Positions 3,160 through 37,734 of a stretch of DNA of 64,000 nucleotides are shown here, piece after piece (position 1 is the stretch's first letter; every line of letters starts with the position of its first letter). This DNA is from Pecten maximus (taxonomy: Eukaryota): NCBI RefSeq assembly GCF_902652985.1, contig NC_047015.1:42470001-42534000 (forward strand). The letters run 5' to 3'. The notes beneath the pieces were generated by a model that worked only from the letters and a program-made list of their open reading frames with translations, did no database searches and was not told where the DNA came from. Position numbers and translations under genes: made by a program.

Positions 3160-3263
3160 GAACCCGGGTAAGGCGTAAGATCAGTAGTGATATTACGTTG
3201 TTATAGGAACCCGTTTGTGTGGTGACAAAGAGCTGACACATACTTTCAGGATGGCAGGTCCAT
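3160..3263 (-). pseudogene. 5' remnant of a Cys-loop receptor paralog (start codon, signal peptide, first helix), truncated next to a SINE
   Basis: Aligns with the 5' end of 9093-10262. The frameshifted translation LFVTTQTGSYNNVISL matches HFVKTQAGSYDNMVSL. ATG at 3263; upstream promoter homology includes a 17-nt exact match to the gene 2 TATA block. Confidence 0.75.
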
Positions 3264-6200
3264 AAATAATGATTTCAGCGTTTATACGTACCTTCGATGT
3301 CTTGGCTAGTATCGTCAATATTAATACTGGTCTTTATATTCATCATCGGTCTGATTTAGTTCAATACACTATATCTATTACAATAACAATTTGTTTGGTT
3401 GTTGTACATCGCATCTGGTCATCAACTGTGTATGCAACAGGGACAAGATCAACTGAACGCTAAGTGTAATATCTCGTTGTTTGCAATGACTTCTACAAAC
3501 AGAAGTGTACCTGAAAGTATGTACTAAAAATAGAAACCATTAACATTACCTCATGACGTACATCATATTAGAGATGTAGTTATTGCTACCAAGAGACATA
3601 TGTTCCATCACATACTCTCAGTATGAGCCCGTTATTAGGAAGTTGTATTGGTCAGGCGTACAGGCACTTTATATTTAACGGAACTTATGGACAACTTCCG
3701 AATGGTAGTGTGTATGGAAGTATAATCTAATTGCGTGTTTTCCGATGGTTAGGTTTATATACTTTGCTATATTTTACCAGTGAATATTTTGAATGTCCAC
3801 TTAGCTAAAAACTTCATGACATGACTAGAAATGAATATGACGTCGAAAATTATGCTATTGATTTCCACGCTAGATTCTTTTTCTTCATTGTCTTTAAAAA
3901 AGCAAAACGTATGGTCCAGCCAATATTAAATCTATACATTGCATTTGTATGTCACAATATACCGATATTTTCTTTGAAATCATTGATATTCTGCTATACT
4001 CTAAAACCATGCAATATCGTCTTTGACGTGATTAATTATTACTGCAAAACTTCACGCAGCATTGTAATAGTGTAATTGTGATACCTAGAGAGATATACAT
4101 ATCTCCTTATTGTTCTACATGGTTATGGCAATATCAAAGAATATTTCTCCCATGTAAAGTAATCATAATAGTATAAGAACATGCAGACATGTCCTGAAAC
4201 TGTATACTATTAATTGTGAATGTAATTTAGTCACGGATACATGCATATCTACGATTTTATTATATGGACAAACGCTACATAGAAACATCTTCCTGGCTCT
4301 AATCTCAACTCGGGGAGAGATAATCAACGTGTCTTAACGATATCGGATATCGATTCCAAGAAAACATACAACGTTGTAAGTACTAGCAGCGTGAAGAGCT
4401 TTTTCGGTCAATTGTTTCTATTTCTAAGCCGCATTTAATTATGACACCTGGCAGAGTATTTGACGTAGCATACTGTAGATATGTTTAACATACAAATAAC
4501 AATGTCTGGTTCGAATGATTCATTGCATCTCAACTTTGGTGTAGCCAAACTTAAATTGTAATCGATATGTGAATGATTATCTGTTAATTAAAAAAATCAG
4601 TAATTTGAGAAGTCAAAATACCTTCACTCTTCTTAACATGAACGTATTGTACAGACAAATTGATGCAAACATTCTCAAACATATCTTTTATCTCTGAAGT
4701 AACCAAATTATCATAAAGCCTCTTCTACAAATGTGATTCATCATTCCAAATGTCCGTGGTACCGATATCCTGTGACACACGCGGTAAAACCTAAGATAAG
4801 ACAATCAATAGAATTTACTGACTGAATCAAATAACTGTCAAGGGACTCAATGCATGTTTTAGTTTAATTTGTTATTCCTCATTAGAAGTGGAACATAAGG
4901 TTTATGGCTAGTAGGTTCTACTCCTTGGTAAGCATTGGTGTTTTTTAAATTTTATTCTAATGGTCTTGCTGTTTGCAGAAAGCATTGATGGCAATGTAAA
5001 ACGTTCTGTAGTTCATTTTTACATGTTTTCCCTTATTCTTTTGATATCAGCTAGCATTCTGTAATTAACACAGAACAGTTCACCAGTAAATGCTAATGCA
5101 CAAAACTACGGATTTTACTTTTTTTGTCTAGGTTATCTGTGATAACTATCATTTTGAGGGATTGTGGCAAGAGTTCGAGGTGGTTTGAATGAACTTGAAT
5201 CTTGCACACAAATTATTCACGGAGTATAAACGGTAGCTGAATTGTGACACAAAAAGGCGATGTACGTCAACAATAAAGCAAGGTGGGGGAGGGGAGGAGG
5301 GGGGGGGGGGGGGGGTATTATAACGTTGATCTAATCCGCGAAAACAATGGACACCATGTAAACTAAGTTACTGTAACTTTTGTTATTTTTATTTATATTT
5401 ATATTGCGTTGTTTATACACATGTCTGACAACAACTATCAATGTCTTTAAAACTTGTCTGTAAGTGTTTAGACAAAGTTCAGAATACACTGTTAACAAAC
5501 GCTACAGGCATGATAACGAAACCATAATTCCTATTCAAAATCAATATCAATAACACAAGGCATAAATAAGAATAAATGTATTTCTACCACAATATATGCA
5601 TTTTATTCAACTCCCAAGGCATTAAATAATCATTACAACTGTTGAATAATATTACGTTTATACCACACTTGGAATAAACCCTTAATGCGTTTTGATTAGT
5701 TAACACGGTGACCTTTGAACGGGACTATAATTTATTCACGTGATTCAATGCGATCTGATTGGCTAACACTTGAAAACCGCTTCACGATGTCCCAGAAATG
5801 ATAACGCACAAGAAGTAGTTCGCAGGTTTTTTTTTTGTGTGTGTTATTTTCCCTGAAAAAATATATATTTAGACTAATATGCTATACGGTTATTAAATTA
5901 GAAGACATGGACACAAGATCACTGTAAGTGTTTTTGTATTTATTATTTTGTATCGATCAGTCATACACATTTCAAGCTGTAGTGCTACACAATGATTGAA
6001 AGCCACGAAGAAAACATTTTATATCTAACTTCGTATTTAAAAATGATTTTCATACACTTACATTTTGTAAAAACCATTAAAGCAGAACACATAGCACTTT
6101 TAAGGTTTACTTGAATATATATCATTACAAACAATGAGGGCCATCCTTTAGGGACATGAGCTGCCGTTACAGATCTCAGTGCTTAAAAACTAATTGGCGT

Positions 6201-6387
6201 ATAATATTCCGAAATAAATCGATTGGTGATATTTACTCTACAGATAAACATTGACATCGATCTACACACAATGCATGAAAACCTTTTCTCACTACCGCAA
6301 TTTTGTCAATGTTTTAAATACTCAGAATAGTATGATGTTTGCTTTTTGGTTAAAAGCAATGCTTGTCATTTATTATGATTTCTTCTG

Positions 6388-9092: not shown

Positions 9093-10262
9093 TCATAGTC
9101 GGTAGGAAATTCTCACAACATTGACAATAGTCTCAGTAAGGGTAGCAACAGAATAGAAAACAACGAACGCAACGTCCAAACGCTTCCCTATATGTAGCCA
9201 GGTAACAACATTATTTTCACCAGGTAATTGCATCATATCCGCCTCGTTCTTCTCTGCCTCCACTCGTCTCGGCTGTAGTTTACAACAGTATAGTAACCAG
9301 TAAGGGATTGGTTTATCTTCATTGTTTTTATAAGCGCACAGAGTTATAATCACGGACAATACAATCAGAGCGCTGATGATCAATCTTACCATTAAAGAAA
9401 TTGTAAAAATAGACACCGGGTCACTTGTGTTTGGGATACTGTCCGACATTATAGTCATGTACATTGTCAGGGTTAAAAGCATTGTTGTTGCGAAGGACAC
9501 TCTCTCCCCGGAATCTGCTGGCAGAAAAAACGCCAGTAGGGTAACGAAATTCAACAGACAAACGGGCAGCATGATTGTGTATAACAGGTATGTTGGTCGC
9601 CTCTCAACAGAGTATGATATAACAATGGTTGCAGAATAGTTGCCGGGAATATATTTCCAAATTCCTGTTCGCGATACAATCCAAAACAAATTTTCAGTTA
9701 AGTCCAAGTTTTCGGCTTGAGGATTTATATTCAAGTCAATAACTGTATACGGCTCCATTACTGTGAAATATAAGCTACAGTTGTGAACATCGTACGGGTA
9801 GTAGGTGATATCCGGTGAGCATGAAGATGTCAAAATTTTATTGTAAATAGCAGCAGAATATCCGGAACTGTAAGTAGTGATAGATGATGTCGCTGTTATC
9901 AATTCACTGTCTACACCACTGGACAAGACAATGGCCGGGCTCCAAACCTGAGATGTAGAGAAATAAGATGTTTTGATGTTGTCATAATTGGCAGGATTCC
10001 AATATAATTTTCCGTCCAACCATCCTAGGTAGATAGACGCCAGTACAGTGAATTTTCCCGCAACTGCGTCGAATTCGTGAAAATACGCCGTCGAGTACAT
10101 GAATGATATGTCCATGGCGTTGTCCTGATTTTGTACAGGGCGTATGTTCTTGCTGTAGTTTGAGAGAAGATCGGTATGGAGTGATACCATATTGTCATAA
10201 GATCCCGCTTGTGTTTTTACAAAGTGGTGCCAAACAAATACTGCCAGGATGTAGACTTCCAT
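9093..10262 (-). CDS. Single-exon Cys-loop ligand-gated ion channel subunit, nAChR-like non-alpha type (array gene 1, intact, 389 aa)
   Basis: Signal peptide; RP motif; WxD and VWSP motifs; Cys-loop CSPDITYYPYDVHNC (C-x13-C); ERRP pre-M1; M2 SGERVSFATTMLLTLTMYM; short M3-M4 loop; M4. No loop C CC. Confidence 0.95.
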   Translation of the reverse strand: MEVYILAVFVWHHFVKTQAGSYDNMVSLHTDLLSNYSKNIRPVQNQDNAMDISFMYSTAYFHEFDAVAGKFTVLASIYLGWLDGKLYWNPANYDNIKTSYFSTSQVWSPAIVLSSGVDSELITATSSITTYSSGYSAAIYNKILTSSCSPDITYYPYDVHNCSLYFTVMEPYTVIDLNINPQAENLDLTENLFWIVSRTGIWKYIPGNYSATIVISYSVERRPTYLLYTIMLPVCLLNFVTLLAFFLPADSGERVSFATTMLLTLTMYMTIMSDSIPNTSDPVSIFTISLMVRLIISALIVLSVIITLCAYKNNEDKPIPYWLLYCCKLQPRRVEAEKNEADMMQLPGENNVVTWLHIGKRLDVAFVVFYSVATLTETIVNVVRISYRL

Positions 10263-13044: not shown

Positions 13045-14215
13045 TCACAAACGGTAAGAAATCTTCACAACATTTACAACAGTCTCAGTAATAGTCACGA
13101 CAAGGTACAAAATAAAGAATGCTATATCCAGGCGTCTCCCTAGGGATCGCCAAGTGGCAACAGTACCACGTAAGCTCAACTTATCATTAGTTTACATCGT
13201 CCTTCTCTCCCTCCACTCGTCCTGGCCTAAGTTTGCAGCAGTATAGTAACCATATAGGGATAGGTTTGTCGTCATTAGTGTTGTAAACGCACAGAGTTAT
13301 AATCACGGTCAACACAATCAGAGCGCTAATGATCAGTTTAATCATCAGAGAAACCGTGAGAATGGACACTGGGTCACTGGTGTTTGGGATACTGTCCGAC
13401 ATTATGGTCATGTACATTGTCAAAGTTAAAAGCATTGTAGTGGCGAACGACACTCTCTCCCCGGAATCCGCTGGCAGAATAAACGCCAGTAGGGTAACGA
13501 AATTCAACAGACAAACGGGCAACATTATTGTGTATAACAAGTATGTTGGTCGCCTTTCGAATGAGTATGATATAATTATATTTGAAGAGTAGTTGTTCAG
13601 AATGTGCTTTTCTATTCGATTCCTCGATGATACCCAAAGCAAGTTATGAGATCTGTCATTGTTTTCGCCCTGTGGATCAAGTTTAAGGTCAATGACTGTA
13701 TACGGTTCCATTACTGTGAAATATAAACTACAGTTGTGGACATCGTACGGGTAGTAGGTGATATCCGGTGAGCATGCCGATGTTACCATTTTAGAGTAAA
13801 TAGCGAAAGAATATCCGGAACTGGCAACTGTGATAGATGATGTCGCTGTGATAATTTCAGTGTCTACACCACTGGACAAGGTAAGGACTGGTGACCATAC
13901 CTGAGATGTAGAGAAATAAGATGTTTGGATGTTTCCGTACTTGGAAGGATTCCAGGTTAATTTTCCATCGAACCAGCCAAGATAAATAGCCGCTAGTACA
14001 GTAAATTTTCCCGCGACTGCATCGAACTCGTACAAATACGGCATAGTGTATATAAACGTTATACTCATGGTGTGATCCTGATTTAGTATAGGACGAATAT
14101 TCCTGGAGTAGTTTGACAAAAGGGTGGTATGAAGGGACGCCATGTTGTCATAGGATCCTGCTCGTGTGCTTACGAAGAGGTGACATAAAACTACTGTCAT
14201 GAAGTTATTTGCCAT
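13045..14215 (-). pseudogene. Single-exon Cys-loop subunit (array gene 2), one frameshift in the M3-M4 loop; recent pseudogene or assembly error
   Basis: The 342-aa ORF closely resembles gene 1 and stops at 13187. An intact M4 (TWRSLGRRLDIAFFILYLVVTITETVVNVVKISYRL*) continues in another frame to TGA at 13045. Confidence 0.9.
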
Positions 14216-17786: not shown

Positions 17787-18882
17787 TTGGTAGATTTAGA
17801 CGATATGTTATTCCTACTATATTAACTATTGTCTCATTAACAGTCTTCACACTGAACTGAACAATACGGAAAACAATACATCAAATCGTCTCCCGATGGA
17901 AGGCCAGGTAGCGACCTTACTATACGATCCAATATGTCTACGGGGTGTTTCCTCTCAGGCTCCACCTTTCTATCACCGATAACTTCTTGTTGCTTCCCTA
18001 TTTTATAGCAGTAAACCGACCATTGTGGTACCGGTTTGTCATCGCTTGTATTATATATACAAAGCGTCGTTATCTCTGCCAGGACAATAAAAGCGCTGAA
18101 GATAAGTTTAATCACCAGGGAAATCGTGAGAATGGATACCGGGTCACTGGTGTTTGGGATACTGTCCAACATTATTGTCATGAACATTGTCAATGTTAAA
18201 AGCATTGTAGTGGCGAACGACACTCTCTTCCCGGAATCCGCTGGCAGAATAAACGCCAATAAGATTGCGAAATTTAGCAAGCAAACTGGTAAAATGATTG
18301 TATATACCAAATATGTCGGTCGCTGCTCTAAAGTAAATGACGCTTCTACAGTTGAGGTATAGTTTATAGTGATGTAACCATTTCGTTTTAAACTCCAAAA
18401 CAAATTTCAATATATTGAACATCTATAACTTGTGAATGAAAATTGACCAGAGTATACGGGTTCATCGCTAAAACTATAATTGAGCAATGATGGACGTCAT
18501 ATGGATAGTAGGTTATATTCACCGTACAGGACGAGGTCACGATCTCAGTAGCTATAGCTAAGCAAACCCTGAAGAAAATACAGTGATAGATGATGTCGTT
18601 GTAAGAACCACGTTGTCCACACCACTTGCTGCAGTTATAACAGGAAAGGAAAACAAACACCAATGTTGTACATTTGCCTGCAACTGCGTCAAAATCTTGA
18701 AAATATGTCATCGGGTATATAAACGTCATACTCATCGCATTGTCCTTGCTTTGTATAGGACTTATGAACCTGGAATAGTTAGAAAATAGATCGGTTTTGG
18801 GCCTTGCCATGTCGTCATAAGACCCAGCATATGTGCGCACAATGATGCCCAATAACACCATTACTAACGTGCCATTCTTCAT
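17787..18882 (-). pseudogene. Decayed Cys-loop subunit (array gene 3)
   Basis: Signal peptide plus GSYDDM start, Cys-loop CTVNITYYPYDVHHC, M1-M3 and M4 are all recognisable. It carries an internal ECD deletion (WxD...VWSP segment missing), several frameshifts (~18640, ~18560, ~18406, ~17945, ~17850) and a -1' E-to-K change (SGKRVS). Confidence 0.9.
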
Positions 18883-20474: not shown

Positions 20475-20634
20475 TTGGTAGATTTAGACGATATGTTATT
20501 CCTACTATATTAACTATTGTCTCATTAACAGTCTTCACAGAACTGAACAATACGGAAAACAATACATCAAGTCGTCTCCCGATGGAGGGCCAGGTAACGA
20601 CCTTACTATACGATCCAGTATGTCTACGGGGTGT
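20475..20634 (-). pseudogene. Orphan M4-coding fragment, near-identical copy of the 3' end of gene 3
   Basis: 160 bp matching 17787-17948; translates KVVTWPSIGRRLDVLFSVLFSSVKTVNETIVNIVGITYRL. Confidence 0.9.
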
Positions 20635-22141
20635 AGATTTGCTAAACTATGCTCTCTGGAGCAATGAATGCCCCCCCACCCCCCTTCAGAAAATTCTTTA
20701 ATGACAAATAGTGTCAGGTTATTCTTAAATCGCCAAAGAAAATCGGAAGGATCTCGATTGAGGATCACTGATTAGATATTAAGAAGTACCCATTATTGTA
20801 TATCAATGTGTTTATGATATTGATTTGCCTATTGTTAATTGATGATTAGGAAATTTAAGAACCGCCAAAAAAGTGTCATTGTATGTATATACATATGATG
20901 CAAGATGTTATTGCTGTTTTACAAAGCACGTAATGCGAACAAAATACACTGTATGCACTTCATAAGTACACTGATACAATCAATCAATCTGTTTATTAAA
21001 GTACCATATATCAGAATATCATTGTACAAGTATATAGTTACAAAGTATATCTAACCAGTATAAAATACTGATATGCTAAAAAGAACTGTTACACTAAGTA
21101 TTTTTAGATAAATAAATCCAATCACAAATTATAATCCAGAGAGCAGGTGAAAGATAATATGTTTATTTGGTTTTAAATGTATGTACATGTATTGTTTTCC
21201 CCCTTGGTTTTAATATTTTCATGTCAATCATTTAACAGTACACTGATACAAATAATGTTCATATTGCATATTGCAAAAAAAAAAAAAAAACAGAAATCTA
21301 TTCCCAATAACAATGCCCAATAAGTGAGGATAAACACTAGTTTTTTAAGTATATATCACTACTTGAATAAAGGAAATATGGAAATGGCTTCCATTGTCTG
21401 ATGTGTTTGTTAAGTTATCGAGCGAACTGATGTCATTCAGCATTGATTTCTGTGATCCTTGCTCTATATTTACACACATGAAATGTTATCCACTGTGGGT
21501 TTCCGTGCAACACAATATATTTTGCTTTACTAAAGGCGGTATGTGTTAGAATTGGTAATATGTGCGAAGATGATGAAACAAGTTTTGTTATAAACATTCA
21601 TCTTGCTTTCCTCATTAAGTTCATATGGAATCTTGTCAAAACGTTATTATTGTAACATTATCTAGATTGTATTCATATTTCTTTGAATATAGGAGATCAC
21701 AAAGGAATCTATTTGGTTATATAACAACACCCTTTCAATGCACGTATTATTGTTTCGAATATACATTTTTCTTTGTGCTGCTTTGATTTAAATCTTTGAT
21801 AAATGAAGAATAAAACAATGTCAAATCCATGTTCCGTACTTCTATTAGTTAAATCGATATATATACATAATATATATCATACCTTGAGATATTGCATAAT
21901 TTAAACAGCGTATCTGAATTTCATATACGCATCCTTTCTAGTAACAAATGAATGTCGGTCACGTGACTGGGGAAACAATCGAGTTATTTAGCTGCCAAGA
22001 AAACTGCGAAATACTGAACTCCGAAGTAGGAAAGTCTGAAAAAAATGGGCTGGTGTACTGCATAGCAGCCCCCTACAAGACCACATACAGAAAATAACTT
22101 CAAATTCGGCGGATACACGGCGTAATCAGCGTCGGAGAACA

Positions 22142-23200: not shown

Positions 23201-23250
23201 CAGAATCCAACAGCCACAAAAAACAAACTTCAATTGAGAATCTTAAATGT

Positions 23251-26127
23251 ATGTACACCAACGCCGATCAACTGAAAAACAAAATGTCGGAACTAAACAT
23301 CAGGGTAAATGTGATAAAACCAGATATAATAGGTATCACAGAGGTAAAAGCAAAAACTAGAATACAAAATATGAAAGCTTCAGAATACTTTTCAGACGAA
23401 AACACGAACTACAAACTGTTTAGCAAGAACATTGAAAATAAGGAGGGCAGAGGACTGATATATTTCATAAACTCGAAACTGAAAGCAGAGGAAGTAAACA
23501 TGGAATCATCATTCCAGGAAAACCTTTTCGTCGAAATAAGTATAAACAAAAGCACAAAAATCCTAGTAGGTCTCATTTATAGATCGGACTCGGGGACCGC
23601 GGAAAACAATAAGAAATTACAAGATCTAATAGAAGAGACAACACAGAAAGGCTATGCAAAAATATTATTAATGGGAGATTTTAACTACCCAGGAATAAAT
23701 TGGGAGACATGGAACACGAGAGGAGAAAGTACCGAAACACAGGAATACAAATGCATGCAAAAGCTACAAGACAATTTCTTTTTCCAACACGTGCAAGAGC
23801 CGACCAGATGGCGAGGAAAAGATAACCCACATATCGTTGATCTTCTTATAACAAGAGATGAACACTCGCTCTCAAGTATAGAATACCAAAGCCCACTCGG
23901 AAAGAGTGGCCACTGTGTCCTAATTTTTAATGTAATATGCAATATAAAAGTAAAACTAAGGAGTAAAAAGAAAATCTGTTATAAAAATGCTGATTTCGAT
24001 ACTATCAACAATGAATTAAACAAGATGAATTGGGATGAAGAATTACAGAGTTCAGGAAACATAAACGAAAATTGGATTATATTCAGAAAAATCATAAAAG
24101 AAGCAGAGAATAAACATGTACCGACAAAAATAATCACAGTTGGGAGGAACAACAAACATAGCTTTCCTGCAGACCAGGCAACACTGGAGGCCATCAAAAA
24201 GAAACACTCCCTTTTTCGAAAGGCGGCATCAAGTAAAGACATGGAAGTTAGAAACCAATATAATAAAGCCAGAAATAAAGTAAGGAAATTAACCCGTAAT
24301 TCAAGGAAAGAGTATGAAAAAACATTGCATTAAAAGCCAAAACGGATCCTAAAGCAGTTTGGAATTATATTAAATCTAAATCAACAACAAAGTCGGAAAT
24401 CGGAGATTTGTATACAAAGACCAACGACAAAACCTCAACAAAAGTATCATCAGATATAGGGAAAGCGAATAAATTCTTCAGTAGTGTATTTGTAAAGGAA
24501 GAAGTTGAAGTAACTCCACAACTAAACCAACGGGAAGTTATTGAGGAAATGACAACTCTGAATAATACAAGGGAGAAAGCATTTAAACTACTGATCAACC
24601 AAAAACCGGAAAAGTCATCTGGACTGGACGAACTCCATCCAATGTTTCTCAAAAATACAGCCTCGTCATTATCAGGCCCTTTAACAATAATATTCAATCA
24701 ATCACTATCAACAGGAACTCCCAGACGATTGGAAAAAATCCCGTGTGAGTGCTATCCATAAGAAAGGCGATAGAAGTGAAGCAGGCAACTACAGACCAGT
24801 CAGTTTAACATCAGTGGTATGCAAAATTCTGGAGACATTAATAAGGGAACATTTAACCAAATTCATGAGATCCAACAAATATTTTTCGGATAAACAATAT
24901 GGGTTTATATCTGGAAGATCAACAAGTCTTCAGCTTTTGGAGGTTTTGGATATATGGACAGAAGCCCTGGATAAAGGACAGGTTGTAGATTGTATTTACA
25001 TGGATTACCAGAAGGCATTCGATACAGTTCCACACAATAGACTCCTCAATAAACTAAATTCATACAACTTCTCCAACCAAATAATCTCTTGGATAGCAAA
25101 ATTCTTAAAAGGTAGACAACAAAAAGTAACTGTGAATGGTGCAGACTCTGACTGGACTGAAGTCACATCAGGAATTCCTCAAGGCTCAGTGCTAGGACCA
25201 TTAATGTTTGTCATCTTTGTAAATGACCTCCCTGAAACAGTTCAATCGGATATGTACCTTTTTGCAGACGATACCAAAGTATTCAAAATAATAAAAAGCG
25301 AGCACGACAGTGCAGAGCTTCAAAAGGATCTGGACACAATGTGTAAGTGGAGTGATACATGGCTACTTAAGATGCACCCAGACAAATGCAAACATATGAG
25401 AATAGGCAAGGGTAAAGGAAGAGGACATGATGAACCCGAACCGGACTACCATCTCAACGGGAAATACCTGCAGAAAACCAAACAAGAGAAGGACATAGGA
25501 GTAATCATCGACTCCGAGCTTTCGTTTGACGAACATATATCTGAAAAAGTTAAGAAAGCGAACTCTATGTTTGCACTCATCAGAAGGACTTTCCAGTTTA
25601 TGGACACCAGGTCTTTTATCCCATTATATAAATGTCTGGTAAGATCCCAACTGGACTACGCTAGTCCTGTGTGGGCACCTCACTTACAAAAACACATTGA
25701 CAAGATAGAAGGGGTTCAAAGAAGAGCAACCAAGTGTCTCCCGGGAATGAAGGAATTGACCTACAGCGAGAGGCTGGAAAAACTCAAACTACCAACTTTG
25801 GCATTCAGAAGAATTAGAGGAGATATGATAGAACTGTACAAAATAATAAGCGAAATATATGATAAAGAATGTTTTAATGGTATCATTTTATGGAAGAATG
25901 CTGCTGAACGCAACAGTACCAGAGGACATACCAAAAAAATATTCCCTAGACTATCCACAAATATGCTAAGAAAAAACTACTTTTCAAACAGAACAGTGTC
26001 AATCTGGAATAAATTGCCAGAACAGGTTATATCAGCATTAAATGTAAACTCCTTCAAAAACAAGCTAGACGATCACTGGAAAAACCAAGAACTTTTCTTT
26101 AATTACAAAGCATCAATTAAATCATAA
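23251..26127 (+). CDS. LINE ORF2 (APE endonuclease plus reverse transcriptase), two frameshifts
   Basis: YTNAD, ITE, GDFN and SGH (for SDH) endonuclease motifs; NYRPVSLTS, DYQKAFD, GIPQGSVLGP and FADD RT motifs. Frameshifts at the A-run 24317-24322 and at ~24716; start position uncertain. Confidence 0.92.
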
Positions 26128-27741: not shown

Positions 27742-29049
27742 TCAACCTATTTGACACATTATCCTTACGATATTGAAGATGGTCTCTGTAATTGTCAGTA
27801 AAGTAAATATAACCAACATTACGCAATCCAAGGATCTTCCGACCTCTGGCCACATGGGAGAATACTGTTTCCTTATTTCCTGTTCACTTCTATTGTCAAT
27901 TGATTCTAGGTTATTAGTATGCCCTGGCTCAAGATCAGTCACTTCCAGCTTATGTTCAGACGTAGAATCCCTAATTCTGATTTTCCTGTATAAACATAGA
28001 ATGCGTAATAGCCACAAAGGAATGGGTTTGACGTCACTGAGTCGGTTAATATATAACGTCATGATTACCGTGAAAACTATAAGACTGCTAGTGATGAGCT
28101 TGATCATCAAAGAAATTGTGAGAATGGACACAGGGTCACTGGTGTTTGGGATACTGTCCGACATTATTGTCATGTACACGGATAGGGTCAGTAGTATTGT
28201 TGTGGCGAACGACACTCTTTCCCCGGAGTCCGCAGGCAGAACAAATGCCAGCAGGTTAAGGAAATTCAACAGACATACCGGAAGAAGAAAATTGCACATC
28301 AAATATGTTGGACGTCGCTCTATCATTAATGCAACTTCAATGAATGTATTTGTGCTTTCAATGTTGTAAGTACGGATTTCTGAAGCACCGAGTTTCCACA
28401 ATAAGTTACTGTCTGCTCCAGGTAATATATATATGGTGATCAAATACAGACTGACCTCATTCATCGGTTCCTGTGTTGTAAATTGGAGAATACATTTGTG
28501 GGCATCATAAGGATAATAAGTGATATCTGGATCACAATTTGTGGTCATCACACCACTCATAAGAAACGAAGCCATCCCTGTATTGTCGTACAAAATGGAC
28601 AAATCTCCATTTTTTATTTTATTTATATAAATGTCGTCGGCACCGTTCGCAACTACAAACGTCGGCGCCCATACAACAGTTTCACGCATTCTCACCTTCT
28701 CGATGTCACCATAGTCTGAAGGAATCCACGTCATCATTTCGTCCCTCCATGTGACAAAGAGAGACCCCGTGGTCACCATCCTTCCATTTACAGCATCAAA
28801 ACCATTCAAAGACGTAAGGGTGTATATTACCTTGATCTCTAGTACATTGCTCTGGTTCTGCAACGGCCGTATATCTCGATTGTAATTCGCCAATAAATCA
28901 GAATGAAGTTTAGACATGTTTCCATAGGAATCAGCATACGAATACCGAGTTATAAAGCCTATCATGAGAATGACTTGTACTGTGAAACTAAGTCGGCAGA
29001 AATTACACTCGGAGTGATACCAACAGTGACAAACTCCCATTATGGTCAT
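27742..29049 (-). CDS. Single-exon Cys-loop ligand-gated ion channel subunit, nAChR-like non-alpha type (array gene 4, intact, 435 aa)
   Basis: Cys-loop CDPDITYYPYDAHKC; VWAP; ERRP; M2 SGERVSFATTILLTLSVYM; four TM helices; no loop C CC. The start may be the second ATG (29040). Confidence 0.95.
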   Translation of the reverse strand: MTIMGVCHCWYHSECNFCRLSFTVQVILMIGFITRYSYADSYGNMSKLHSDLLANYNRDIRPLQNQSNVLEIKVIYTLTSLNGFDAVNGRMVTTGSLFVTWRDEMMTWIPSDYGDIEKVRMRETVVWAPTFVVANGADDIYINKIKNGDLSILYDNTGMASFLMSGVMTTNCDPDITYYPYDAHKCILQFTTQEPMNEVSLYLITIYILPGADSNLLWKLGASEIRTYNIESTNTFIEVALMIERRPTYLMCNFLLPVCLLNFLNLLAFVLPADSGERVSFATTILLTLSVYMTIMSDSIPNTSDPVSILTISLMIKLITSSLIVFTVIMTLYINRLSDVKPIPLWLLRILCLYRKIRIRDSTSEHKLEVTDLEPGHTNNLESIDNRSEQEIRKQYSPMWPEVGRSLDCVMLVIFTLLTITETIFNIVRIMCQIG

Positions 29050-30567: not shown

Positions 30568-30670
30568 GTGGATACTTCCTCTTGTAATACACTCAGATTG
30601 GACAGGTATGCATTATCTCAACAATCTAACAATTAATATTGTATGAAATCGATAATCACACACGTTGTCA
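30568..30670 (-). repeat. Orphan duplicate of the gene 4 upstream region (29204-29310)
   Basis: gtgga..tac..tcctcttg..ata.actc.gattggacag....gcattat...aacaa......aatattg.atgaaatcgataatca is shared between the two sites. Confidence 0.8.
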
Positions 30671-31868: not shown

Positions 31869-31900
<32 letters not shown>

Positions 31901-32229
31901 AACAACAACAACAAGCAAACAAAAACAACAACAACAAAACTAAAACAAATATACACAACAGCATATTATTACATTCAAGACAAAACGTAATAGCAATTGT
32001 AGGCCTAGACATTATACATAACATAATATCCTAACTAATGGATGTTTGGACACTGTTAATTATCTTGTATCATATATAATTGGTACACTGGACACAAACG
32101 GGTAGTATTAACACTACAGCGTCACGTTTTAGGGGAGATCAATTCATTTACTACACCAGGCAACGGCACCTCTAAACATAGAAAAAAACCCGCATTGTCA
32201 ATCCAATCATACGTTCCAAAATTATCATA

Positions 32230-33530
32230 TCAACCTATTTGACACGTTATCCTAACCATATTGAAGATGGTCTCCGTAACCGTCATTAAGGAAAATATAC
32301 CCAACATCATGTAATCCAGAGACCTTCCTATCTGTGGCCATGTTGCAGCATGCTGTTTTCCTGCATCGTGGTCAATGTCATCGTTACTTGTCGCGGTTTC
32401 TTTAGGATGTTCAAATTCAATATCTGATACTTCAAACACGTTGTCTGCTTTCGAGTCTTTAAGTGTGATTTTTCTGTAGAAACAGAGCATGCGCAACAGC
32501 CAAAGAGGAATTGGCCTGATGTCGCTGAGTCGGTATATATTTAAAGTCACGATTACTGTGAAAACTATAAGACTGCTAGTGATAAGCTTGATCATCAGTG
32601 AAATCTTAAGGATGGACACAGGGTCACTGGTGTTTGGGAATACTGTCCGACATTATTGTCATGTACACGGATAGGGTCAGTGGTATTGTTGTGGCGAACG
32701 ACACTCTCTCCCCGGAGTCCACAGGCAGAACAAATGCCAGCAGGTTGATGAAATTCAACAGACATACCGGAAGAATAATATTATACATCAAGTGTGTTGG
32801 TCTTCGCTCAACAGTTAAGGTAACTGCAATAAATGTATTTGTATTATGAACGGTGTATGTCTGGATTTCTGAATTGCCGAGTTTCCACAATAAATTACTG
32901 TCTGCTCCAGGTAATATGTAAATATTGGTTAGATAAAGTCTGACCTCATTCATCGGTTCCTGCGTTGTAAATTGGAGAATGCATTTGTGTACGTCGTAAG
33001 GATAATAGGTGATGTCTGGATCACAAGTTGTGGTCATCACACCACTCATAAGATACGAAGCTATTCCCGTGCTGTTGTACAAAATGGACGAATCTTCATG
33101 TTTTATTCCATTTATATAAATATCCTCGGCACCGTTTGCTACTACAAAAGTCGGCGCCCATACAACAGTTTCACGCATTCTCACCCGTTCGATGCCACCA
33201 TAGTCTGATGGAATCCACGTCATCATTACGTCCCTCCATGTGACAAAGAGAGACCCCGTGGTCACCATCCTTCCATTTACAGCGTCAAAGTCGATAAAAG
33301 ACTTGAGCGTATACAGTACATTGACGTCAAGTGTATGACTCTGGTTCTGTAACGGACGTACATCTCTGTTGTAGTTCACCATTAAATCCGAATGAAGTTT
33401 AGACATGTTCCCATAGGACTCACCATTGGAATGCTGTACTAAAATACCAATAACTAGGAAGATTCGTATCGCTATATCAATTCGAAAAGGAGTACATCCG
33501 GAGGGATACCTGTTGCGACAACGTTTCCAT
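32230..33530 (-). pseudogene. Single-exon Cys-loop subunit (array gene 5, close paralog of gene 4) with two 1-nt insertions
   Basis: Colinear with gene 4. One extra base just after ATG 33530 (run 33524-33526) and one at ~32640 in the M2-M3 loop; also an L8'P change in M2 (TTIPLTL). Confidence 0.9.
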
Positions 33531-34899
33531 TCTGATCACCTCTATCTCGCATTCGCATGTCGATTAGTTTATTACATTCATCCAATTCTTGTCTATACAT
33601 TAATTAGAAAATGCTACAACCATTTGTTCATTTGAGCATGATATTTGCACAGTGGCATAAACATCTAATACGCGGGATTCTTTGATGGTGAGATTCCCTG
33701 GAGAAATACCCATTCTCATGACAGACAGGCGTTATCTAAACAAGTTTATAGATTTATAGTACATCAAATCAATCAACACAATGCACAACATCAATATGGA
33801 CATACCATGTAGCTTGAAGAATATGGCAGATCTGATTTTGACAACATACCCATAAGATGATGATATACATATAGATGTACAAAAGCACCTTAAATTATTG
33901 CAGTTTGAATCTTAAAGAGAAAAAGGATTAACTAAATGTTAAAACAGTGTCACTAATATATGACTAACGGTTATATATCACATGGACTACTACAGAACCA
34001 AAGAAAAAATCTTAGAAAGAATGTTTAAGCCCCACAATCTCCCCATGGTCTGAACTTAGAATCAAACAAATCCTACACACCAGAATTGGCTCGATTTTAT
34101 TATTATATTGATCATTTATGATTTTAAGATTGCTGATATAGGGGGTTGGGTTGGGGTTGGGGGCAGACGTTATACGCTCAATTAATGTTCTTCTTTATTA
34201 CATTTATTATTGTGTATTCAAATTTTGACAAAACTTTAGTTAATGTTTCAGTGATTAATCACGCGCATTTAACTATTTAACACTTTATATGTACAATGTA
34301 TACGTGTCAATGTACTTACATGCTTATAAACATAAAACTTTATCAAGCTAAACTTCATAATTCCTAATGGATTGATCATCAGTTAATTTAATATGGATTT
34401 ATCATCATTTAATTTAATTCAAACCTGCTCAGTTACGTCAACAATTCAATCGTTAAGTGCAATTAACATCTAAAATTAGAAAATGAACTAACCTTGCGCG
34501 CGCGCCGAGCTACATCCCTGATGACTAGCAGATGAACATGAGTTTGTTTATCAAATGATGATTCAATAGTTTAATAGTGTATCTTTAAGTTTTCGATCTG
34601 AAGCCTTATGGCTCATTATTATGTAGATAGAAACATCAATTTCAGCAACATATTTACAATATGTAAATTAGGAGATTGGTAAAACTGTAACTGATGAAAG
34701 GAATATATAGAAACATTCAACAGCATATATACAATTTACAAGAGAAGTTAGTGGATAGACAAAGCAATATATATAACTGGAGATGAATACATAGAAATAT
34801 TATTTTCAACAGTAAATAAACAATTTTAAAGAATAGGGAGGGGCTGGACAAAACAATAGGTATAATTGGAAATAAAGACATACAAATATGATATTGATA

Positions 34900-36060
34900 T
34901 ATACTAAAGGTTGGAATCTCAAACGTATTAAACAGCTTAATTGCGAATACTTTCCAAGATTACATAGCTCTTTTTAATACGAGCAGATAGCAGATGGATA
35001 TTTTTAAATGAAGAAGGGCGGTTACAGCAATGTTTAATGAGCCTTTCACGAATATCAACATAAAGAGGCCAAATAAGAGCAAAATAGAACTCGTCCTCTA
35101 CATGGTATTGGTTACAATAGCGACATAACCTATTCGCCCTTGTGATATTGCGATACCGGCCATCTTCTATATAAACTTAATGCGATTAAAGTCGTAGATT
35201 CGAAATAAGTCTATGTAAAGTTGTCAACAATGAATATATATAAGTAATATATACATGACATTTCAATAAATTCATTTCTTGCTTGAATAAAAACATCGAT
35301 CAAACTCTGCGCAAATCAATGTAAAAATACTCTTCCGTTATCAACCAGACATAACCCAAACCAAAAGACAACAAAAACTTTTAACTTGACAACGCCAATT
35401 ACAATTTCTATGCTTACCATTCCACATGTCTCTATACACTGACTTTAGAACAATATTGTCGCATTTAATCAATTTTAATCAAAATTTGGTTATCCGACAT
35501 TTACTAATGATATGTAATGGCAAAAGACTTCATTCCGAATAAATCATAAAATATGGTGTGCTGGTTTTAACATTTAAAAAAATCCTTCTCAAAAGTCAAC
35601 ATGAACCTTTTCTAATTTGTCTAAACCCCATGTTTCGCAACCGTTATCAAGAATAGAGGAGATGTAAACATAAAAAACCATTCAGTTTAGATTATACGTT
35701 AAGAAATTGTCAACACATTATACATGCATTTACGGCCTTGTTTAGCAATATCAACTTGAGTTTTTGTGAACTAGTTAAACACCACATCTAAGTAGTTGAA
35801 TCGATCAACAATCACTATTTCGTTGCCATGGAAGTAAAATCTTTCAATAGCTCGCAATCTTCCGATTTTACGAAATACAGCTTCTTTTCAGCATCGACTG
35901 TCAATCGCCAACTGCCGCTATATTGTTTTAAGGAATAAAACATTTTCTGTAAGCTAGAGGCAGATTCTAAGAAAATGACAGTGTCATCTGCGTACACAAG
36001 AAGAAACAGGGAAACATCTCTTAAGAATAAAGTGTCACAGGAGGAATTGATTACCTTCAG
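34900..36060 (-). mobile_element. Decayed 5'-truncated LINE (RT C-terminal half)
   Basis: LFLLVYADDTVIF RT motif near 36000. C-terminal IEDGRYRNITRANRLCRYCNQYHVEDEFYF zinc-knuckle-like segment at ~35040-35170. Many stops and frameshifts. Confidence 0.85.
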
Positions 36061-36489
36061 TTCATTATCAAAGCTGATAATTTTCCCTGTTAATTCATGA
36101 TAGATAATGTTGTGATTCTATCCACTCCTTTTGTTTTCCTTCGCCTTTGGGATTCAGATGCATGGCTTTGATCGCCAGTCCTGCATCCCCCAAAACAAAA
36201 CAGTTTGAGCATGCGTGTAGAACTCATTTTCCATGGTTTATTAAACAGAGAGCGGAGCACCGCGTCAGAGATTCCCCGTAATCAGTAGATAGTGTCCCCG
36301 GTTTGTTGATTGTAGTTATGAAAACTATGGTATTGATTCTCATATTATCATCAATAAGGTTTATGATCTATCTAACATATTTTGTTATTTAACCTTATTT
36401 TTTGAAGTTACGAAAACATATACGGCCTAGTCATTACTATCCTTTATTTACTGTAGATATTCAGTAAACGCAACATAACCTTTTCCTAA

Positions 36490-37734
36490 CTAACCTATGC
36501 GGTACAAAATACGAACCAAATTATATATGGTTTCTACAAGGGTAATACCTGTAAATACTATAAAGAATATAGTGTCCAAACTTCGCCCGATAGAGCGCCA
36601 CGTGATAGAAGATGTGTCGGTTGTCTTTGTTAGGATTGATTTGTCCAAATCTTCCTTTTCTATCACATCTTCGGCCGGACGATCTTCACAGTGGCTTCGG
36701 TCTTCTTTGTTACCAACTCTATTCCTGAATCTTGCGATACGCAACAACCACTTTGGAATAGCTTTGCGTTCATCAGTATGGTTCAATTTCACACTTAAAA
36801 CCACTGCCAGCACTATCATACCACTGTACACAAGTTTGATCAGCAATGAAATCGTGAGAATGGACACCGGGTCACTGGTGTTTGGGATACTGTCCGACAT
36901 TATAGTCATGTACACGGACAGGGTCAGTAACATCGTGATAGCAAACGATACTCTTTCTCCTGAGTCAGTCGGCAGAACAAAAGCTAGAAGGTTTGAAAAA
37001 CTCAATAAACAGATGGGGGTAAGAATATTTAAAATGAGGTAGCTAGGGCGCCGTTCAATGGTTACAGATATTTCGATATATGATACGCCTATTTCTGTAA
37101 AGTTCCTGTATTTAAAATCGATAATGTTCCATAGTAAATTCAGCTGCGCTGCAGGGTACACCTCTTTGGGATTGATTACGAATTCCACCTCGCGGATCGG
37201 TTCTTCTGTTGTCAATGTTATCAAACAGACGTGGACATCATATGGGTAGTACGTGATATCCGGGTCACAAGTTGTCGTCATGACAACCTTGATAAAGTAC
37301 TTAGCCATCCCGTCAGCAGTGAACGCAATCGAGGTATCCCCAAACCTTGAAGTTCTCGTGTTAATATCGTCTGCACCATTAGCCACAAATACCACCGGGG
37401 CCCACACGTCCGACTCTGGAAATGTCACTTTCTCTATATTTGCGTGGCGCACCGGTTTCCATTTCATTTTCTCATCCTTCCATGTCAGGTCAAGTAACCC
37501 CATCGTTGTCATTCTCCCATTGACTACGTCAAAATTGTTAAGTGATTTCAATGTGTATCGTACATTAACTAATAACTTTTTTTCCTGGTTTTCAAGAGGA
37601 CGAACTTTCCTAGAATAACCTGCCAAAAGGTCGGACTTGAGGTTAACCATATCTCCATATTTGGCAGCGGAGACACTTGTGAAGAGCATCGACCATACCT
37701 GTATCAGTAGGATTTTCTTACGAGTATAATCCAT
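36490..37734 (-). CDS. Single-exon Cys-loop ligand-gated ion channel subunit, nAChR-like non-alpha type (array gene 6, intact, 414 aa)
   Basis: Signal peptide; Cys-loop CDPDITYYPYDVHVC; ERRP; M2 SGERVSFAITMLLTLSVYM; four TM helices; no loop C CC. Confidence 0.95.
   Translation of the reverse strand: MDYTRKKILLIQVWSMLFTSVSAAKYGDMVNLKSDLLAGYSRKVRPLENQEKKLLVNVRYTLKSLNNFDVVNGRMTTMGLLDLTWKDEKMKWKPVRHANIEKVTFPESDVWAPVVFVANGADDINTRTSRFGDTSIAFTADGMAKYFIKVVMTTTCDPDITYYPYDVHVCLITLTTEEPIREVEFVINPKEVYPAAQLNLLWNIIDFKYRNFTEIGVSYIEISVTIERRPSYLILNILTPICLLSFSNLLAFVLPTDSGERVSFAITMLLTLSVYMTIMSDSIPNTSDPVSILTISLLIKLVYSGMIVLAVVLSVKLNHTDERKAIPKWLLRIARFRNRVGNKEDRSHCEDRPAEDVIEKEDLDKSILTKTTDTSSITWRSIGRSLDTIFFIVFTGITLVETIYNLVRILYRIG

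What the first reader, a model, noticed from the sequence alone, without database searches (positions are those of the whole stretch)
3160..37734. Tandem array of intronless, probably acetylcholine-blind Cys-loop channels: candidate bivalve chemoreceptor system paralleling cephalopod chemotactile receptors
Seen: six co-oriented single-exon paralogs plus remnants, with diverged extracellular domains and a nearly invariant pore. Aligned by eye to nAChR alpha7, the ACh aromatic box is dismantled. The loop A Tyr is absent (WSPAIVLSSG, WAPTFVVANG), the loop B Trp is replaced (TVMEP, TTQEP, TTEEP), the loop D Trp is absent, and loop C is short with no vicinal Cys-Cys. M2 keeps -1' Glu, 9' Leu and 20' Asp, the cation-channel signature. 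Established: octopus and squid chemotactile receptors (CRT1, CRB1) are clustered, intronless nAChR derivatives that lost ACh binding, and bivalves are known to have expanded intronless nAChR-like genes of mostly unknown function. Inference: this cluster is a sensory receptor repertoire for external chemicals, probably evolved in parallel. I cannot tell from the sequence alone whether it has been described.
Basis: partly seen in the sequence, partly recalled or inferred. Interest (0 to 1): 0.9.

Follow-up and report, generated by a model that had tools for sequence, protein, structure and literature searches.

The report
Scallop orphan nicotinic-like channel gene array
This is a tandem array of intron-free, nicotinic-receptor-like ion-channel genes in the king scallop that have lost the acetylcholine-binding residues; it is one more case of a gene expansion already described in bivalves, and what these channels sense is still unknown.

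Summary
The window (Pecten maximus, chromosome piece C1) carries six co-oriented single-ORF Cys-loop genes on the minus strand plus two remnants. Three are intact. Two have single-base homopolymer frame breaks, and for one of these other individuals' contigs read an intact frame. One is a true pseudogene. Three more intact members lie just left of the window. All lack the loop A Tyr, loop B Trp, loop D Trp and loop C Cys-Cys of acetylcholine sites. All keep the Cys-loop, -1' Glu, 9' Leu and 20' Asp/Glu.

The genes form a scallop-only clade with orthologues in three other scallop genera. They are under purifying selection (omega 0.12 in the pore, 0.35 in the binding loops).

The array is not unusual. 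At least 101 single-ORF paralogues exist in this genome, and all 26 sampled also lack loop A Tyr and loop C Cys-Cys. Intronless tandem nAChR-like expansions in bivalves were described in 2019, and a non-cholinergic or chemosensory role has been suggested in print.

The chemoreceptor reading is plausible but untested here: tissue expression could not be established, and no tree with cephalopod chemotactile receptors could be built.

Verdict: a new member of a known kind, of moderate interest.

The parts
3185..3241 (-). Remnant: about 19 codons matching the signal-peptide/N-terminal end of the array's genes
Evidence: tblastn of gB residues 11-29, 53% identity, E = 0.003 in a 9-kb search.
9093..10262 (-). 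g9k: intact single-ORF Cys-loop subunit, 389 aa (subfamily iii)
   Evidence: ORF. PF02931 5e-28 and PF02932 4e-13. Loop A Ser, loop B Met, loop D Ser, no Cys-Cys, -1' Glu, 9' Leu, 20' Asp.
13045..14215 (-). g13k: Cys-loop subunit with one frame break between M3 and M4 at an AAA run near 13190; otherwise full length
   Evidence: 342-aa ORF plus an M4 piece in another frame. dN/dS against g9k is 0.09-0.31 in every domain, M4 included, so it is probably a live gene with an assembly or allele indel. Not checked with reads.
17797..18882 (-). g18k: pseudogene copy
   Evidence: At least three frame changes, loss of the loop D-loop A segment, and -1' Glu changed to Lys.
20485..20673 (-). Remnant: M4 and C-terminal end only
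   Evidence: tblastn with g9k residues 350-389, 63% identity, E = 1e-8.
27742..29049 (-). g27k: intact single-ORF Cys-loop subunit, 435 aa (subfamily ii)
   Evidence: ORF. PF02931 2e-27 and PF02932 1.5e-13. Loop A Ala, loop B Gln, loop D Ser.
32230..33530 (-). g33k: sister copy of g27k. The assembly has two homopolymer frame breaks (33524-33526 and 32639-32640). The gene is intact in other individuals' contigs.
   Evidence: Two ORF pieces. Contigs of X1-X3 leave out one base at 33524 and one at 32639 (table 4, and the loose end at 32639). With these the ATG at 33530 and the conserved SDSIPNTSDPVS motif come into one frame. dN/dS against g27k is 0.22-0.34.
36490..37734 (-). g36k: intact single-ORF Cys-loop subunit, 414 aa (subfamily i)
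   Evidence: ORF. PF02931 2e-29 and PF02932 7e-15. Alignment to alpha7. AF2 model with pLDDT 89.3 and pTM 0.80 shows a canonical subunit. Best structural matches are muscle and alpha7 nAChR. The Ylistrum orthologue is 65% identical.

Best explanation
WHAT IT IS. The region is the right-hand two thirds of a roughly 64-kb tandem array on Pecten maximus chromosome piece C1. The array holds about 10 copies, of which 8 are probably live. It encodes a scallop-specific clade of the intronless nAChR-like Cys-loop subunits known to be massively expanded in bivalves.

SHOWN.
- Each live gene encodes a complete subunit: signal peptide, beta-sandwich ectodomain with the Cys-loop, M1-M4, and a short intracellular loop.
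- The pore has the cation-channel rings (-1' Glu, 9' Leu, 20' Asp).
- The coupling elements are intact: the YYPYD Cys-loop, the pre-M1 Arg, and a near-invariant M2-M3 loop.
- The canonical ACh site is absent on both the principal and the complementary face.
- The genes are kept by purifying selection.
- Three subfamilies with distinct ectodomains predate the split of scallop genera. Later local duplications, one decayed copy and two remnants fit birth-and-death evolution.

INFERRED.
- The subunits assemble into homo- or heteropentamers.
- These are gated at the subunit interface by one or more non-cholinergic ligands that differ between subfamilies.
- They pass cations, probably including Ca2+.

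NOT DETERMINED. Whether the ligand comes from outside the animal (chemoreception) or from inside it (a transmitter, modulator or metabolite). I put external chemoreception at about one in five.
For: Domains and fold.

Binding-site and pore residues.

Invariant gating residues across 92 relatives (R228, P240, E260, L270, P284, C156, C170).

Selection. Nei-Gojobori dN/dS is 0.14-0.28 in the ectodomain and 0.06-0.23 in M1-M3. ML omega is 0.345 in binding loops, 0.185 in the scaffold, 0.124 in M1-M3.

Phylogeny. A clade of 19 scallop sequences has 100/99 support and three subclades, each with orthologues from other scallop genera (Ylistrum balloti for all three, plus Argopecten irradians and/or Mizuhopecten yessoensis for two). 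Ectodomain identity is 62-69% between close cross-genus homologues in the three subclades and 32-49% between subfamilies.

Synteny. Adjacent single-exon copies occur in Ylistrum and Argopecten.

Extent. The array continues left of the window. At least 101 single-ORF paralogues exist genome-wide.

Literature. The same architecture is described for bivalves in PMC6896357.

Other individuals. Contigs cover g33k and g36k and give g33k an open frame.
Against: - No functional or tissue data. ACh-insensitivity is inferred from residues only, and non-canonical ACh or choline binding is not excluded.
- One loop C aromatic residue (the alpha7 Y195 position) is kept as Tyr or Phe in g36k, g27k and g33k.
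- The subunits could be silent structural partners of canonical alpha subunits rather than ligand-binding ones.
- Transcription is only suggested. The holder runs are of unrecorded type, cover the spacers as well as the genes, and show no splice joints.
- The lower synonymous divergence in M1-M3 (for example 0.42 against 1.47 for gB-g9k) suggests that part of the pore's uniformity within the genome may come from gene conversion.
Confidence: 0.75

Rival explanations
1. The array is an exteroceptive chemoreceptor repertoire, expressed in mantle tentacles, gill, palps, foot or larvae. It detects waterborne or contact chemicals and evolved in parallel with cephalopod chemotactile receptors.
For: It shares hallmarks with CRs: intronless genes, clustering, loss of the ACh box, a kept cation pore, a short intracellular loop and a protein of about 400 aa.

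The binding loops evolve about twice as fast as the scaffold. Loop C shows 8 non-synonymous and 0 synonymous changes between the youngest pair.

Distinct ectodomains are kept for a long time.

Most runs with the same species label hold next to none of the stretch. If they are RNA runs, this fits restricted expression.

Published work reports that bivalve nAChR-like genes are most highly expressed in gill, which lacks ChAT (PMC6896357).
Against: No tissue or ligand evidence.

Mean omega is well below 1. Loops against scaffold is not significant in any pair (Fisher p = 0.47-1.0). The loop C signal does not survive correction for 24 post-hoc tests.

The same residue losses occur in all or most of the sampled intronless paralogues (loop A Tyr and loop C Cys-Cys in all 26; loop D Trp in 24 of 26; loop B Trp in only 6 of 26). 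They therefore do not single out this array as sensory.

There is no special similarity to CRT1.
Confidence: 0.2
2. The subunits are receptors, or accessory subunits, for an endogenous signal. This could be a non-ACh transmitter or modulator (amine, betaine or choline, peptide, proton or metal). They would work in neuronal or epithelial signalling inside the animal, for instance in the control of gill cilia, in development, or in immune and stress responses.
For: Orphan nAChR-like channels lacking signature residues are widespread in lophotrochozoans, and some resist de-orphanisation (Alpo4, PMC10338036).

Some expanded bivalve nAChR-like genes are expressed before the nervous system forms. 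Others respond to infection and stress (PMC6896357).

Strong conservation of the pore and gating loop across four genera fits a conserved physiological role.

Orthologues are stable across genera rather than turning over rapidly.
Against: Loop D Trp is missing as well, so the subunits cannot supply a canonical complementary face to an alpha subunit.

Several maintained paralogues with ectodomains only 32-49% identical are more than one conserved endogenous ligand would seem to need.

No expression data.
Confidence: 0.45
3. The copies are retrogene debris: non-functional, or in the process of decay.
For: One clear pseudogene and two remnants lie in the window. There are frame breaks in two further copies as assembled. 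A LINE has inserted within the array. PMC6896357 reports that more intron-poor than intron-rich genes have no or low expression.
Against: dN/dS is 0.06-0.35 in all domains and pairs, including the two copies with frame breaks.

Both breaks of g33k are absent from other individuals' contigs.

Orthologues with open frames exist in three other genera.

The gating motif is near-invariant across the clade (identical in most members).
Confidence: 0.05

Closest known systems
Intronless, tandemly arrayed nAChR-like gene expansion of bivalves and other lophotrochozoans (Jiao et al. 2019, BMC Genomics 20:937, PMC6896357)
   Same: Single-exon genes in co-oriented tandem arrays. Lineage-specific clades. 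LBD-NTM architecture. Most members lack the alpha-type Cys-Cys and the principal ACh residues. Pseudogenised copies lie within arrays. The scallop Mizuhopecten yessoensis was counted at 138 genes. The paper suggests that diverse ligand-binding domains bind diverse ligands.
   Different: This particular scallop-only clade and its Pecten maximus array are not described there. The clade goes one step further than most paralogues by also losing the loop B Trp, which is kept in 20 of the 26 sampled paralogues. It has a near-invariant MTIMSDSIPNTSDPVSI gating motif.
Cephalopod chemotactile receptors (CRT1 of octopus, CRB1 of squid; van Giesen 2020, Allard 2023, Kang 2023; PDB 8eis, 9e6b)
   Same: Intronless, clustered nAChR derivatives of about 400 aa. 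They do not have the ACh-binding residues, keep a cation-channel pore, and have a short intracellular loop.
   Different: Membership of the CR clade was not shown. CRT1 scores lower than alpha7, 5-HT3A and muscle subunits against these proteins (100 against 121 bits). It drops below the top 60 with the family profile. The nearest relatives are scallop genes only. No evidence of sensory-cell expression or of hydrophobic ligands. CRs are reported to be under diversifying selection in the pocket (PMC11526382), whereas mean omega here is below 0.35.
Alpo4, orphan nAChR-like receptor of the annelid Alvinella pompejana (eLife 2023, PMC10338036)
   Same: A lophotrochozoan nAChR-like subunit without the loop C Cys-Cys. 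It is not gated by ACh or serotonin and its ligand is unknown. That study's family tree already included Pecten maximus sequences.
   Different: Alpo4 keeps the key aromatic residues, including the loop B Trp. The scallop clade has lost them. Alpo4 is an isolated lineage rather than a tandem array.
Vertebrate alpha7 nAChR (best sequence and fold match among solved structures)
   Same: Overall fold, Cys-loop, the LPADSGE(K/R) intermediate ring, 9' Leu and 20' acidic ring. Identity is about 22-23% over the aligned length.
   Different: No Y93, W149, Y188, C190-C191 or W55 equivalents. Loop C is shorter. The M3-M4 loop is much shorter. 13' is Met and 16' is Thr, against Val and Leu in alpha7.

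Membership tests
Cys-loop (pentameric ligand-gated ion channel) superfamily, cationic nAChR/5-HT3 branch | Neur_chan_LBD plus Neur_chan_memb domains | tested here: met
   PF02931 at 1e-25 to 1e-29 and PF02932 at 1e-11 to 1e-15 in all four ORFs scanned (the three intact ORFs and the 342-aa piece of g13k).
Cys-loop (pentameric ligand-gated ion channel) superfamily, cationic nAChR/5-HT3 branch | Cys-loop disulfide pair 13 residues apart, with the aromatic-Pro-aromatic-Asp core | tested here: met
   C156 and C170 of g36k are invariant in 92 relatives. The core reads YYPYD.
Cys-loop (pentameric ligand-gated ion channel) superfamily, cationic nAChR/5-HT3 branch | Beta-sandwich ectodomain followed by four transmembrane helices | tested here: met
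   AF2 model with pLDDT 89.3. Helices at 230-252, 260-282, 292-318 and 379-411. Foldseek E = 1e-29 to nAChR chains.
Cys-loop (pentameric ligand-gated ion channel) superfamily, cationic nAChR/5-HT3 branch | Cation-selectivity signature in M2 (-1' Glu, no Pro-Ala-Arg type motif, 20' acidic) | tested here: met
   PADSGER...L(9')...D(20') in all live copies. Ion selectivity itself was not measured.
Acetylcholine-gated nAChR subunit (alpha type, agonist-binding) | Vicinal Cys-Cys at the tip of loop C | tested here: not met
   No Cys-Cys in loop C of any copy.
Acetylcholine-gated nAChR subunit (alpha type, agonist-binding) | Aromatic box: loop A Tyr, loop B Trp, two loop C Tyr, loop D Trp | tested here: not met
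   Loop A is Ala or Ser. Loop B is Glu, Gln, Met or Leu. Loop D is Leu or Ser. The first loop C Tyr is Thr in g36k. Only the second loop C position is aromatic, and only in some copies.
Bivalve intronless tandem nAChR-like expansion (Jiao et al. 2019) | Coding region without introns | tested here: met
   Full-length single ORFs. In Ylistrum and Argopecten the called gene range equals three times the product length plus the stop codon.
Bivalve intronless tandem nAChR-like expansion (Jiao et al. 2019) | Co-oriented tandem array produced by local duplication | tested here: met
   Ten loci on one strand over about 64 kb. Sister pairs gB/gC and g27k/g33k are neighbours.
Bivalve intronless tandem nAChR-like expansion (Jiao et al. 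2019) | Lineage-specific clade within molluscan nAChR-like genes | tested here: met
   A clade of 19 scallop-only sequences with 100/99 support. Outside it, the best representatives are at most 39% identical.
Cephalopod chemotactile receptors (CR) | Phylogenetic membership of the CR clade | tested here: inconclusive
   No CR sequence could be obtained, so no tree was built. As a proxy, CRT1 scores below alpha7, 5-HT3A and muscle subunits. The literature places the CR clade as predominantly cephalopod (PMC13174522).
Cephalopod chemotactile receptors (CR) | Intronless, clustered, ACh-binding residues lost, cation channel | tested here: met
   These features are shared with the whole bivalve expansion, so they do not diagnose CR membership.
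Cephalopod chemotactile receptors (CR) | Expression in peripheral chemosensory cells | not testable with these tools
   The holder runs are of unrecorded library type and coded sample. They are contigs only, and cover genes and spacers alike.
Cephalopod chemotactile receptors (CR) | Activation by environmental (hydrophobic or bitter) compounds and not by ACh | not testable with these tools
   Needs heterologous expression and electrophysiology.

The most novel reading that the evidence does not exclude
The scallop-only clade is a true exteroceptive ionotropic chemoreceptor family. It has lost the loop B Trp on top of the other ACh-site losses. It has three long-lived ectodomain types on one conserved cation pore. 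It would have arisen independently of cephalopod chemotactile receptors from the same nAChR stock. Scallops could use it in mantle tentacles, gill or larvae to detect predators, food or settlement cues. My own suggestion, from general knowledge, is starfish steroid saponins, which trigger the scallop escape response. This would be a second, convergent recruitment of nicotinic receptors into chemosensation within molluscs.
Probability: 0.17. Interest if true: 0.75.

Novelty: new member of a known kind. Interest (0 to 1): 0.35.

Why it matters
Bivalves carry one to two hundred nAChR-like genes whose ligands are almost all unknown. No bivalve chemoreceptor family has been functionally defined.

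This array offers a compact and tractable test set:
- three anciently separated ectodomain types on an almost identical pore;
- open frames and orthologues in four farmed scallop genera.

If any member is de-orphanised, it would show what the bivalve expansion is for. It would also show whether the move from neurotransmitter receptor to chemoreceptor seen in octopus happened more than once.

As it stands, the finding adds a well-annotated example and some assembly corrections. It does not add a new principle.

Tried and rejected
1. TREE WITH CEPHALOPOD CRs. Two word-indexed protein searches, one with a single gene and one with a 32-sequence alignment, returned scallop proteins only. The exhaustive representative search gives unnamed proteins. 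Cluster look-ups named only scallop entries. No CR sequence could be referenced, so the tree was left out. PDB score ranks were used as a weak proxy.

2. TISSUE EXPRESSION. The single run search found four holders from one 2015 study, with no library record and coded samples. The single read-laying run showed near-continuous contig cover from 32100 to 37707, spacers included. Contig depth figures are lower towards 38000 (no contig beyond about 37800), though the tool warns that a contig's depth cannot rank parts of a gene; there were no canonical splice joints. The runs total only about 90 Mb of contigs at depth 5-33, which argues against plain whole-genome DNA. Transcription is still not shown and the tissue is unknown. 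The supplement of PMC6896357 gives per-gene expression for oyster and pearl oyster only.

3. POSITIVE SELECTION. Domain-level and loop-level dN/dS are all below 0.35. Loops against scaffold is not significant. Site models (PAML, HyPhy) are not installed.

4. Only a 19-aa remnant is there.

5. PSEUDOGENE READING OF g33k. Rejected, because other individuals' contigs lack both extra bases.

6. ESM Atlas look-alikes and the Foldseek search added nothing beyond 'nAChR-like'.

7. EXACT-SEQUENCE LOOK-UP of the window's proteins found only g36k in the public collection. It could not be used to find transcripts.

8. No complex prediction was run.

Full report
WHAT IS THERE

The window is Pecten maximus. 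The assembly has 918,306,378 bases in 3,983 contigs, and the window sits at C1:42470001-42534000. A paralogue on the 33,254,064-base contig C18 is named P. maximus by NCBI.

On the minus strand there are six Cys-loop receptor loci and two remnants.
- Three are intact single ORFs: 9093-10262 (g9k, 389 aa), 27742-29049 (g27k, 435 aa) and 36490-37734 (g36k, 414 aa). Each carries Neur_chan_LBD and Neur_chan_memb well above Pfam's thresholds.
- g13k (13045-14215) is full length but for one frame change at an AAA run between M3 and M4.
- g33k (32230-33530) has two frame changes, both at homopolymers.
- g18k (17797-18882) is a true pseudogene. It has several frameshifts, a deletion of the loop D to loop A segment, and -1' Glu changed to Lys.
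- An M4-only remnant lies at 20485-20673.
- A 19-codon N-terminal remnant lies at 3185-3241.
- A LINE (endonuclease plus reverse transcriptase) sits on the plus strand at 22264-26127, inside the array.

The array does not end at the window's edge. Three more intact genes lie to the left. Two of them, gB and gC (392 aa each), belong to g9k's subfamily. The third, gA (413 aa), is about 33% identical and sits outside the clade. In total there are ten loci over about 64 kb.

ASSEMBLY BREAKS

I laid the contigs of four public runs on 32100-38000. Runs X1-X3 come from other individuals, with many single-base differences. In all three, one base is left out at 33524 and one at 32639. A contig's loose end at 32639 reads straight on into the sequence one base further along.

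With those two changes, the ATG at 33530, the N-terminal hydrophobic segment and the conserved SDSIPNTSDPVS motif fall into one frame down to the stop at 32230. So g33k is open in other animals. The reference has either two homopolymer errors or a private null allele.

The g13k break is of the same kind but was not covered by reads. Its M4 still shows dN/dS of 0.15 against g9k.

THE BINDING SITE AND THE PORE

HMMER aligns g36k to human alpha7 without gaps across loops D and A.
- Loop D: alpha7 W55 (precursor W77) meets Leu80.
- Loop A: Y93 meets Ala118.
- Loop B: W149 meets Glu177.
- Loop C: Y188 meets Thr. C190 meets Ile and C191 meets a gap. The loop is three residues shorter than in alpha7.
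- Only the Y195 position stays aromatic.

Across the paralogues:
- Loop A is Ala or Ser.
- Loop B is Glu, Gln, Met or Leu.
- Loop D is Leu or Ser.
- No copy has a Cys-Cys.

M2 reads E(-1')RVSFATTMLL(9')TLTMYMTIMSD(20'). The LPADSGER ring is like that of alpha7. 13' is Met and 16' is Thr.

The Cys-loop (YYPYD core), the pre-M1 Arg, the M1 Pro and the M2-M3 Pro are invariant in 92 relatives.

The AlphaFold model of g36k is confident (pLDDT 89.3, pTM 0.80). It shows a standard subunit with a two-residue loop C tip and a short M3-M4 loop. Its best structural matches are muscle and alpha7 nAChR chains.

EVOLUTION

A careful ML tree was built from 53 sequences: the array, 18 homologues from the protein searches (17 from scallops, 1 unnamed JGI protein), and 27 single-ORF paralogues fetched from other chromosomes. 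It puts gB through g36k in a clade of 19 scallop-only sequences with 100/99 support.

The clade has three subclades: g36k; g27k with g33k; and gB, gC, g9k and g13k. Each contains sequences from other scallop genera: Ylistrum balloti in all three, Argopecten irradians in two (ii and iii) and Mizuhopecten yessoensis in one (ii). The three ectodomain types therefore predate the split of these genera. gB/gC and g27k/g33k are later local duplications.

In Ylistrum a g27-like and a g36-like gene are adjacent and single-exon. In Argopecten two members lie 10 kb apart.

Ectodomain identity is 62-69% between close cross-genus homologues but 32-49% between subfamilies. M1-M3 identity is 79-93% and 66-76% respectively. 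The 17-residue M2/M2-M3 stretch MTIMSDSIPNTSDPVSI is identical in most members across four genera; a few differ at one position. Selection, and not only gene conversion, therefore holds it.

Pairwise dN/dS is 0.14-0.28 in the ectodomain and 0.06-0.23 in M1-M3. ML omega on a fixed tree of seven genes is 0.345 for the six binding loops, 0.185 for the rest of the ectodomain, 0.124 for M1-M3, 0.351 for the intracellular loop and 0.153 for M4.

The loops therefore evolve about twice as fast as their scaffold, but under net purifying selection. The loop-scaffold contrast is not significant in any single pair. Loop C has 8 non-synonymous and 0 synonymous changes between gB and gC (Fisher p = 0.005). 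That is one of 24 post-hoc comparisons, and the pooled young pairs give p = 0.06.

Synonymous divergence is lower in M1-M3 than in the ectodomain (0.42 against 1.47 for gB-g9k). This hints at some gene conversion.

HOW SPECIAL IS IT?

Not very. A six-frame search of the genome with g36k returned 101 scored matches out of 251 candidates, a lower bound. Nearly all are single open frames of 350-520 aa, in many tandem groups on at least 13 chromosome-scale contigs plus two small scaffolds.

Of 26 sampled paralogues outside the clade:
- none has a loop C Cys-Cys or a loop A Tyr;
- only two have a loop D Trp;
- 20 keep the loop B Trp;
- all keep -1' Glu and 9' Leu.

Among the 144 single-domain proteins of the best 150 representatives in a 1.84-billion-protein library:
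- none has a Cys-Cys;
- 68 have the loop B Trp;
- 140 have -1' Glu;
- all have 9' Leu.

That library holds 728 representatives at E of 1e-30 or better.

The loss of the ACh box with a retained cation pore is thus the common design of a very large family. This clade differs only in having also lost the loop B Trp and in its fixed gating motif. Another first-stage note in this genome describes a similar three-gene cluster elsewhere.

WHAT IS KNOWN

Jiao et al. 2019 (PMC6896357) described the following:
- massive nAChR-like expansions in bivalves, with 138 genes in the scallop Mizuhopecten;
- genes that are mostly intronless or intron-poor, in tandem arrays, arising from retroposition followed by tandem duplication;
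- few members with conserved ACh sites;
- the highest expression in gill, where ChAT is not expressed;
- responses to stress and infection.

They proposed that diversity of the ligand-binding domain supports binding of diverse ligands.

The Alpo4 study (PMC10338036) included P. maximus sequences in a lophotrochozoan tree. It drew the parallel between orphan nAChR-like channels and cephalopod CRs.

A 2026 preprint (PMC13174522) resolves a predominantly cephalopod CR clade and a wider 'CR-like' clade that includes bivalves. It raises the idea that divergent clades are ionotropic chemosensors, and calls for functional tests.

A 2024 study of bivalve tentacles states that CRs are known only from cephalopods and that no bivalve sensory gene repertoire has been characterised (PMC11682238).

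Nothing in my searches tests it for scallops.

RELATION TO CRs

As a proxy, g36k scores 121 bits to alpha7, 114 to 5-HT3A, 114 to a muscle alpha subunit, and 100 to octopus CRT1. With a profile of 92 family members, alpha7 scores 300 bits and CRT1 falls below the 60 best (under 253 bits).

Together with the scallop-only clade, this fits an independent expansion. It does not exclude a shared ancient non-cholinergic ancestor.

EXPRESSION

Only four runs, from one 2015 study, hold the stretch. Their library type is not on record and their samples are coded.

Their contigs cover 32100-37707 almost continuously, spacers included. The depth figures of the contigs laid are about 33 at g33k's 3' end and about 5 over g36k, with none beyond about 37800 (a contig's depth is one figure for the whole contig, so this cannot rank genes or parts of a gene). 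There are no canonical splice joints.

Each run totals about 90 Mb of contigs, a tenth of the genome. Depth of 5-33 on this stretch therefore argues against plain whole-genome DNA and for RNA with read-through. This is an inference. The tool itself warns that RNA is a guess.

The twenty other listed runs with the same species label hold next to none of the stretch. Transcription is suggested and tissue is unknown.

VERDICT

- three of the six copies, not all six, are intact as assembled;
- at least one broken copy is an assembly or allele artefact;
- the array extends beyond the window.

The best-supported account is a scallop-specific, selectively maintained clade of orphan, cation-selective, non-cholinergic pentameric channel subunits. 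It belongs to the known bivalve intronless expansion.

A non-ACh ligand is inferred. Whether that ligand is environmental is open. I give the chemoreceptor reading about one chance in five, and an endogenous-signal role about 45%.

Novelty: a new member of a known kind.

Noticed in passing
window 32639-32640, 33524-33526 and about 13190: Single-base homopolymer length differences break the frames of two otherwise conserved genes in the reference. For the two sites in g33k, contigs of three runs from other individuals carry one base fewer and restore the frame. These are probably long-read assembly indels, which would affect gene counts for this family genome-wide.
   Followed up: partly
window 22264-26127 (+): A LINE-type retrotransposon lies inside the array. 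One ORF has an endonuclease/exonuclease/phosphatase domain (689 aa) and a second has a reverse transcriptase (460 aa). They are separated by a frame change.
   Followed up: partly
G000:C1:42443857-42468620 (left of the window; loci L001-L003): Three further intact members of the array lie here. gA (413 aa) is divergent, and its Ylistrum orthologue is annotated '5-HT3A-like'. gB and gC (392 aa each) are 86-97% identical per domain.
   Followed up: yes
array genes, M1-M3 against ectodomain: Synonymous divergence is two to three times lower in M1-M3 than in the ectodomain for several pairs (gB-g9k 0.42 against 1.47). This hints at gene conversion, or at synonymous constraint, confined to the pore-coding part.
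   Followed up: no
window 35060-36084 and 34991-35040: Some contigs of X1-X3 skip 1023 bases (ends TA..TT) and 48 bases in the spacer between g33k and g36k. The ends are non-canonical, so these are probably insertion/deletion polymorphisms and not introns.
   Followed up: no
window 43332-45008 (+): A single 558-aa ORF with a B-box zinc finger and faint NHL/SGL beta-propeller signals. It is a TRIM-like intronless gene next to the array.
   Followed up: partly
window 56307-58730 (+) and 52218-53060 (-): Long ORFs of 807 aa and 280 aa with no Pfam family above threshold. Their nature is unknown.
   Followed up: partly
window 61383-63217, 60976-61328 and 47740-48806: Satellite arrays. A 40-bp G-rich unit occurs in 46 copies (92% matches), with a related 28/102-bp array beside it. 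These explain the strong GC skew of the last 4 kb. A 22-bp unit occurs in 49 copies at 47.7-48.8 kb.
   Followed up: partly
protein P0002 (Mizuhopecten yessoensis, 701 aa): The annotated product matches the query in two stretches and is about twice the normal length. It is probably two adjacent array genes fused by the annotation.
   Followed up: no
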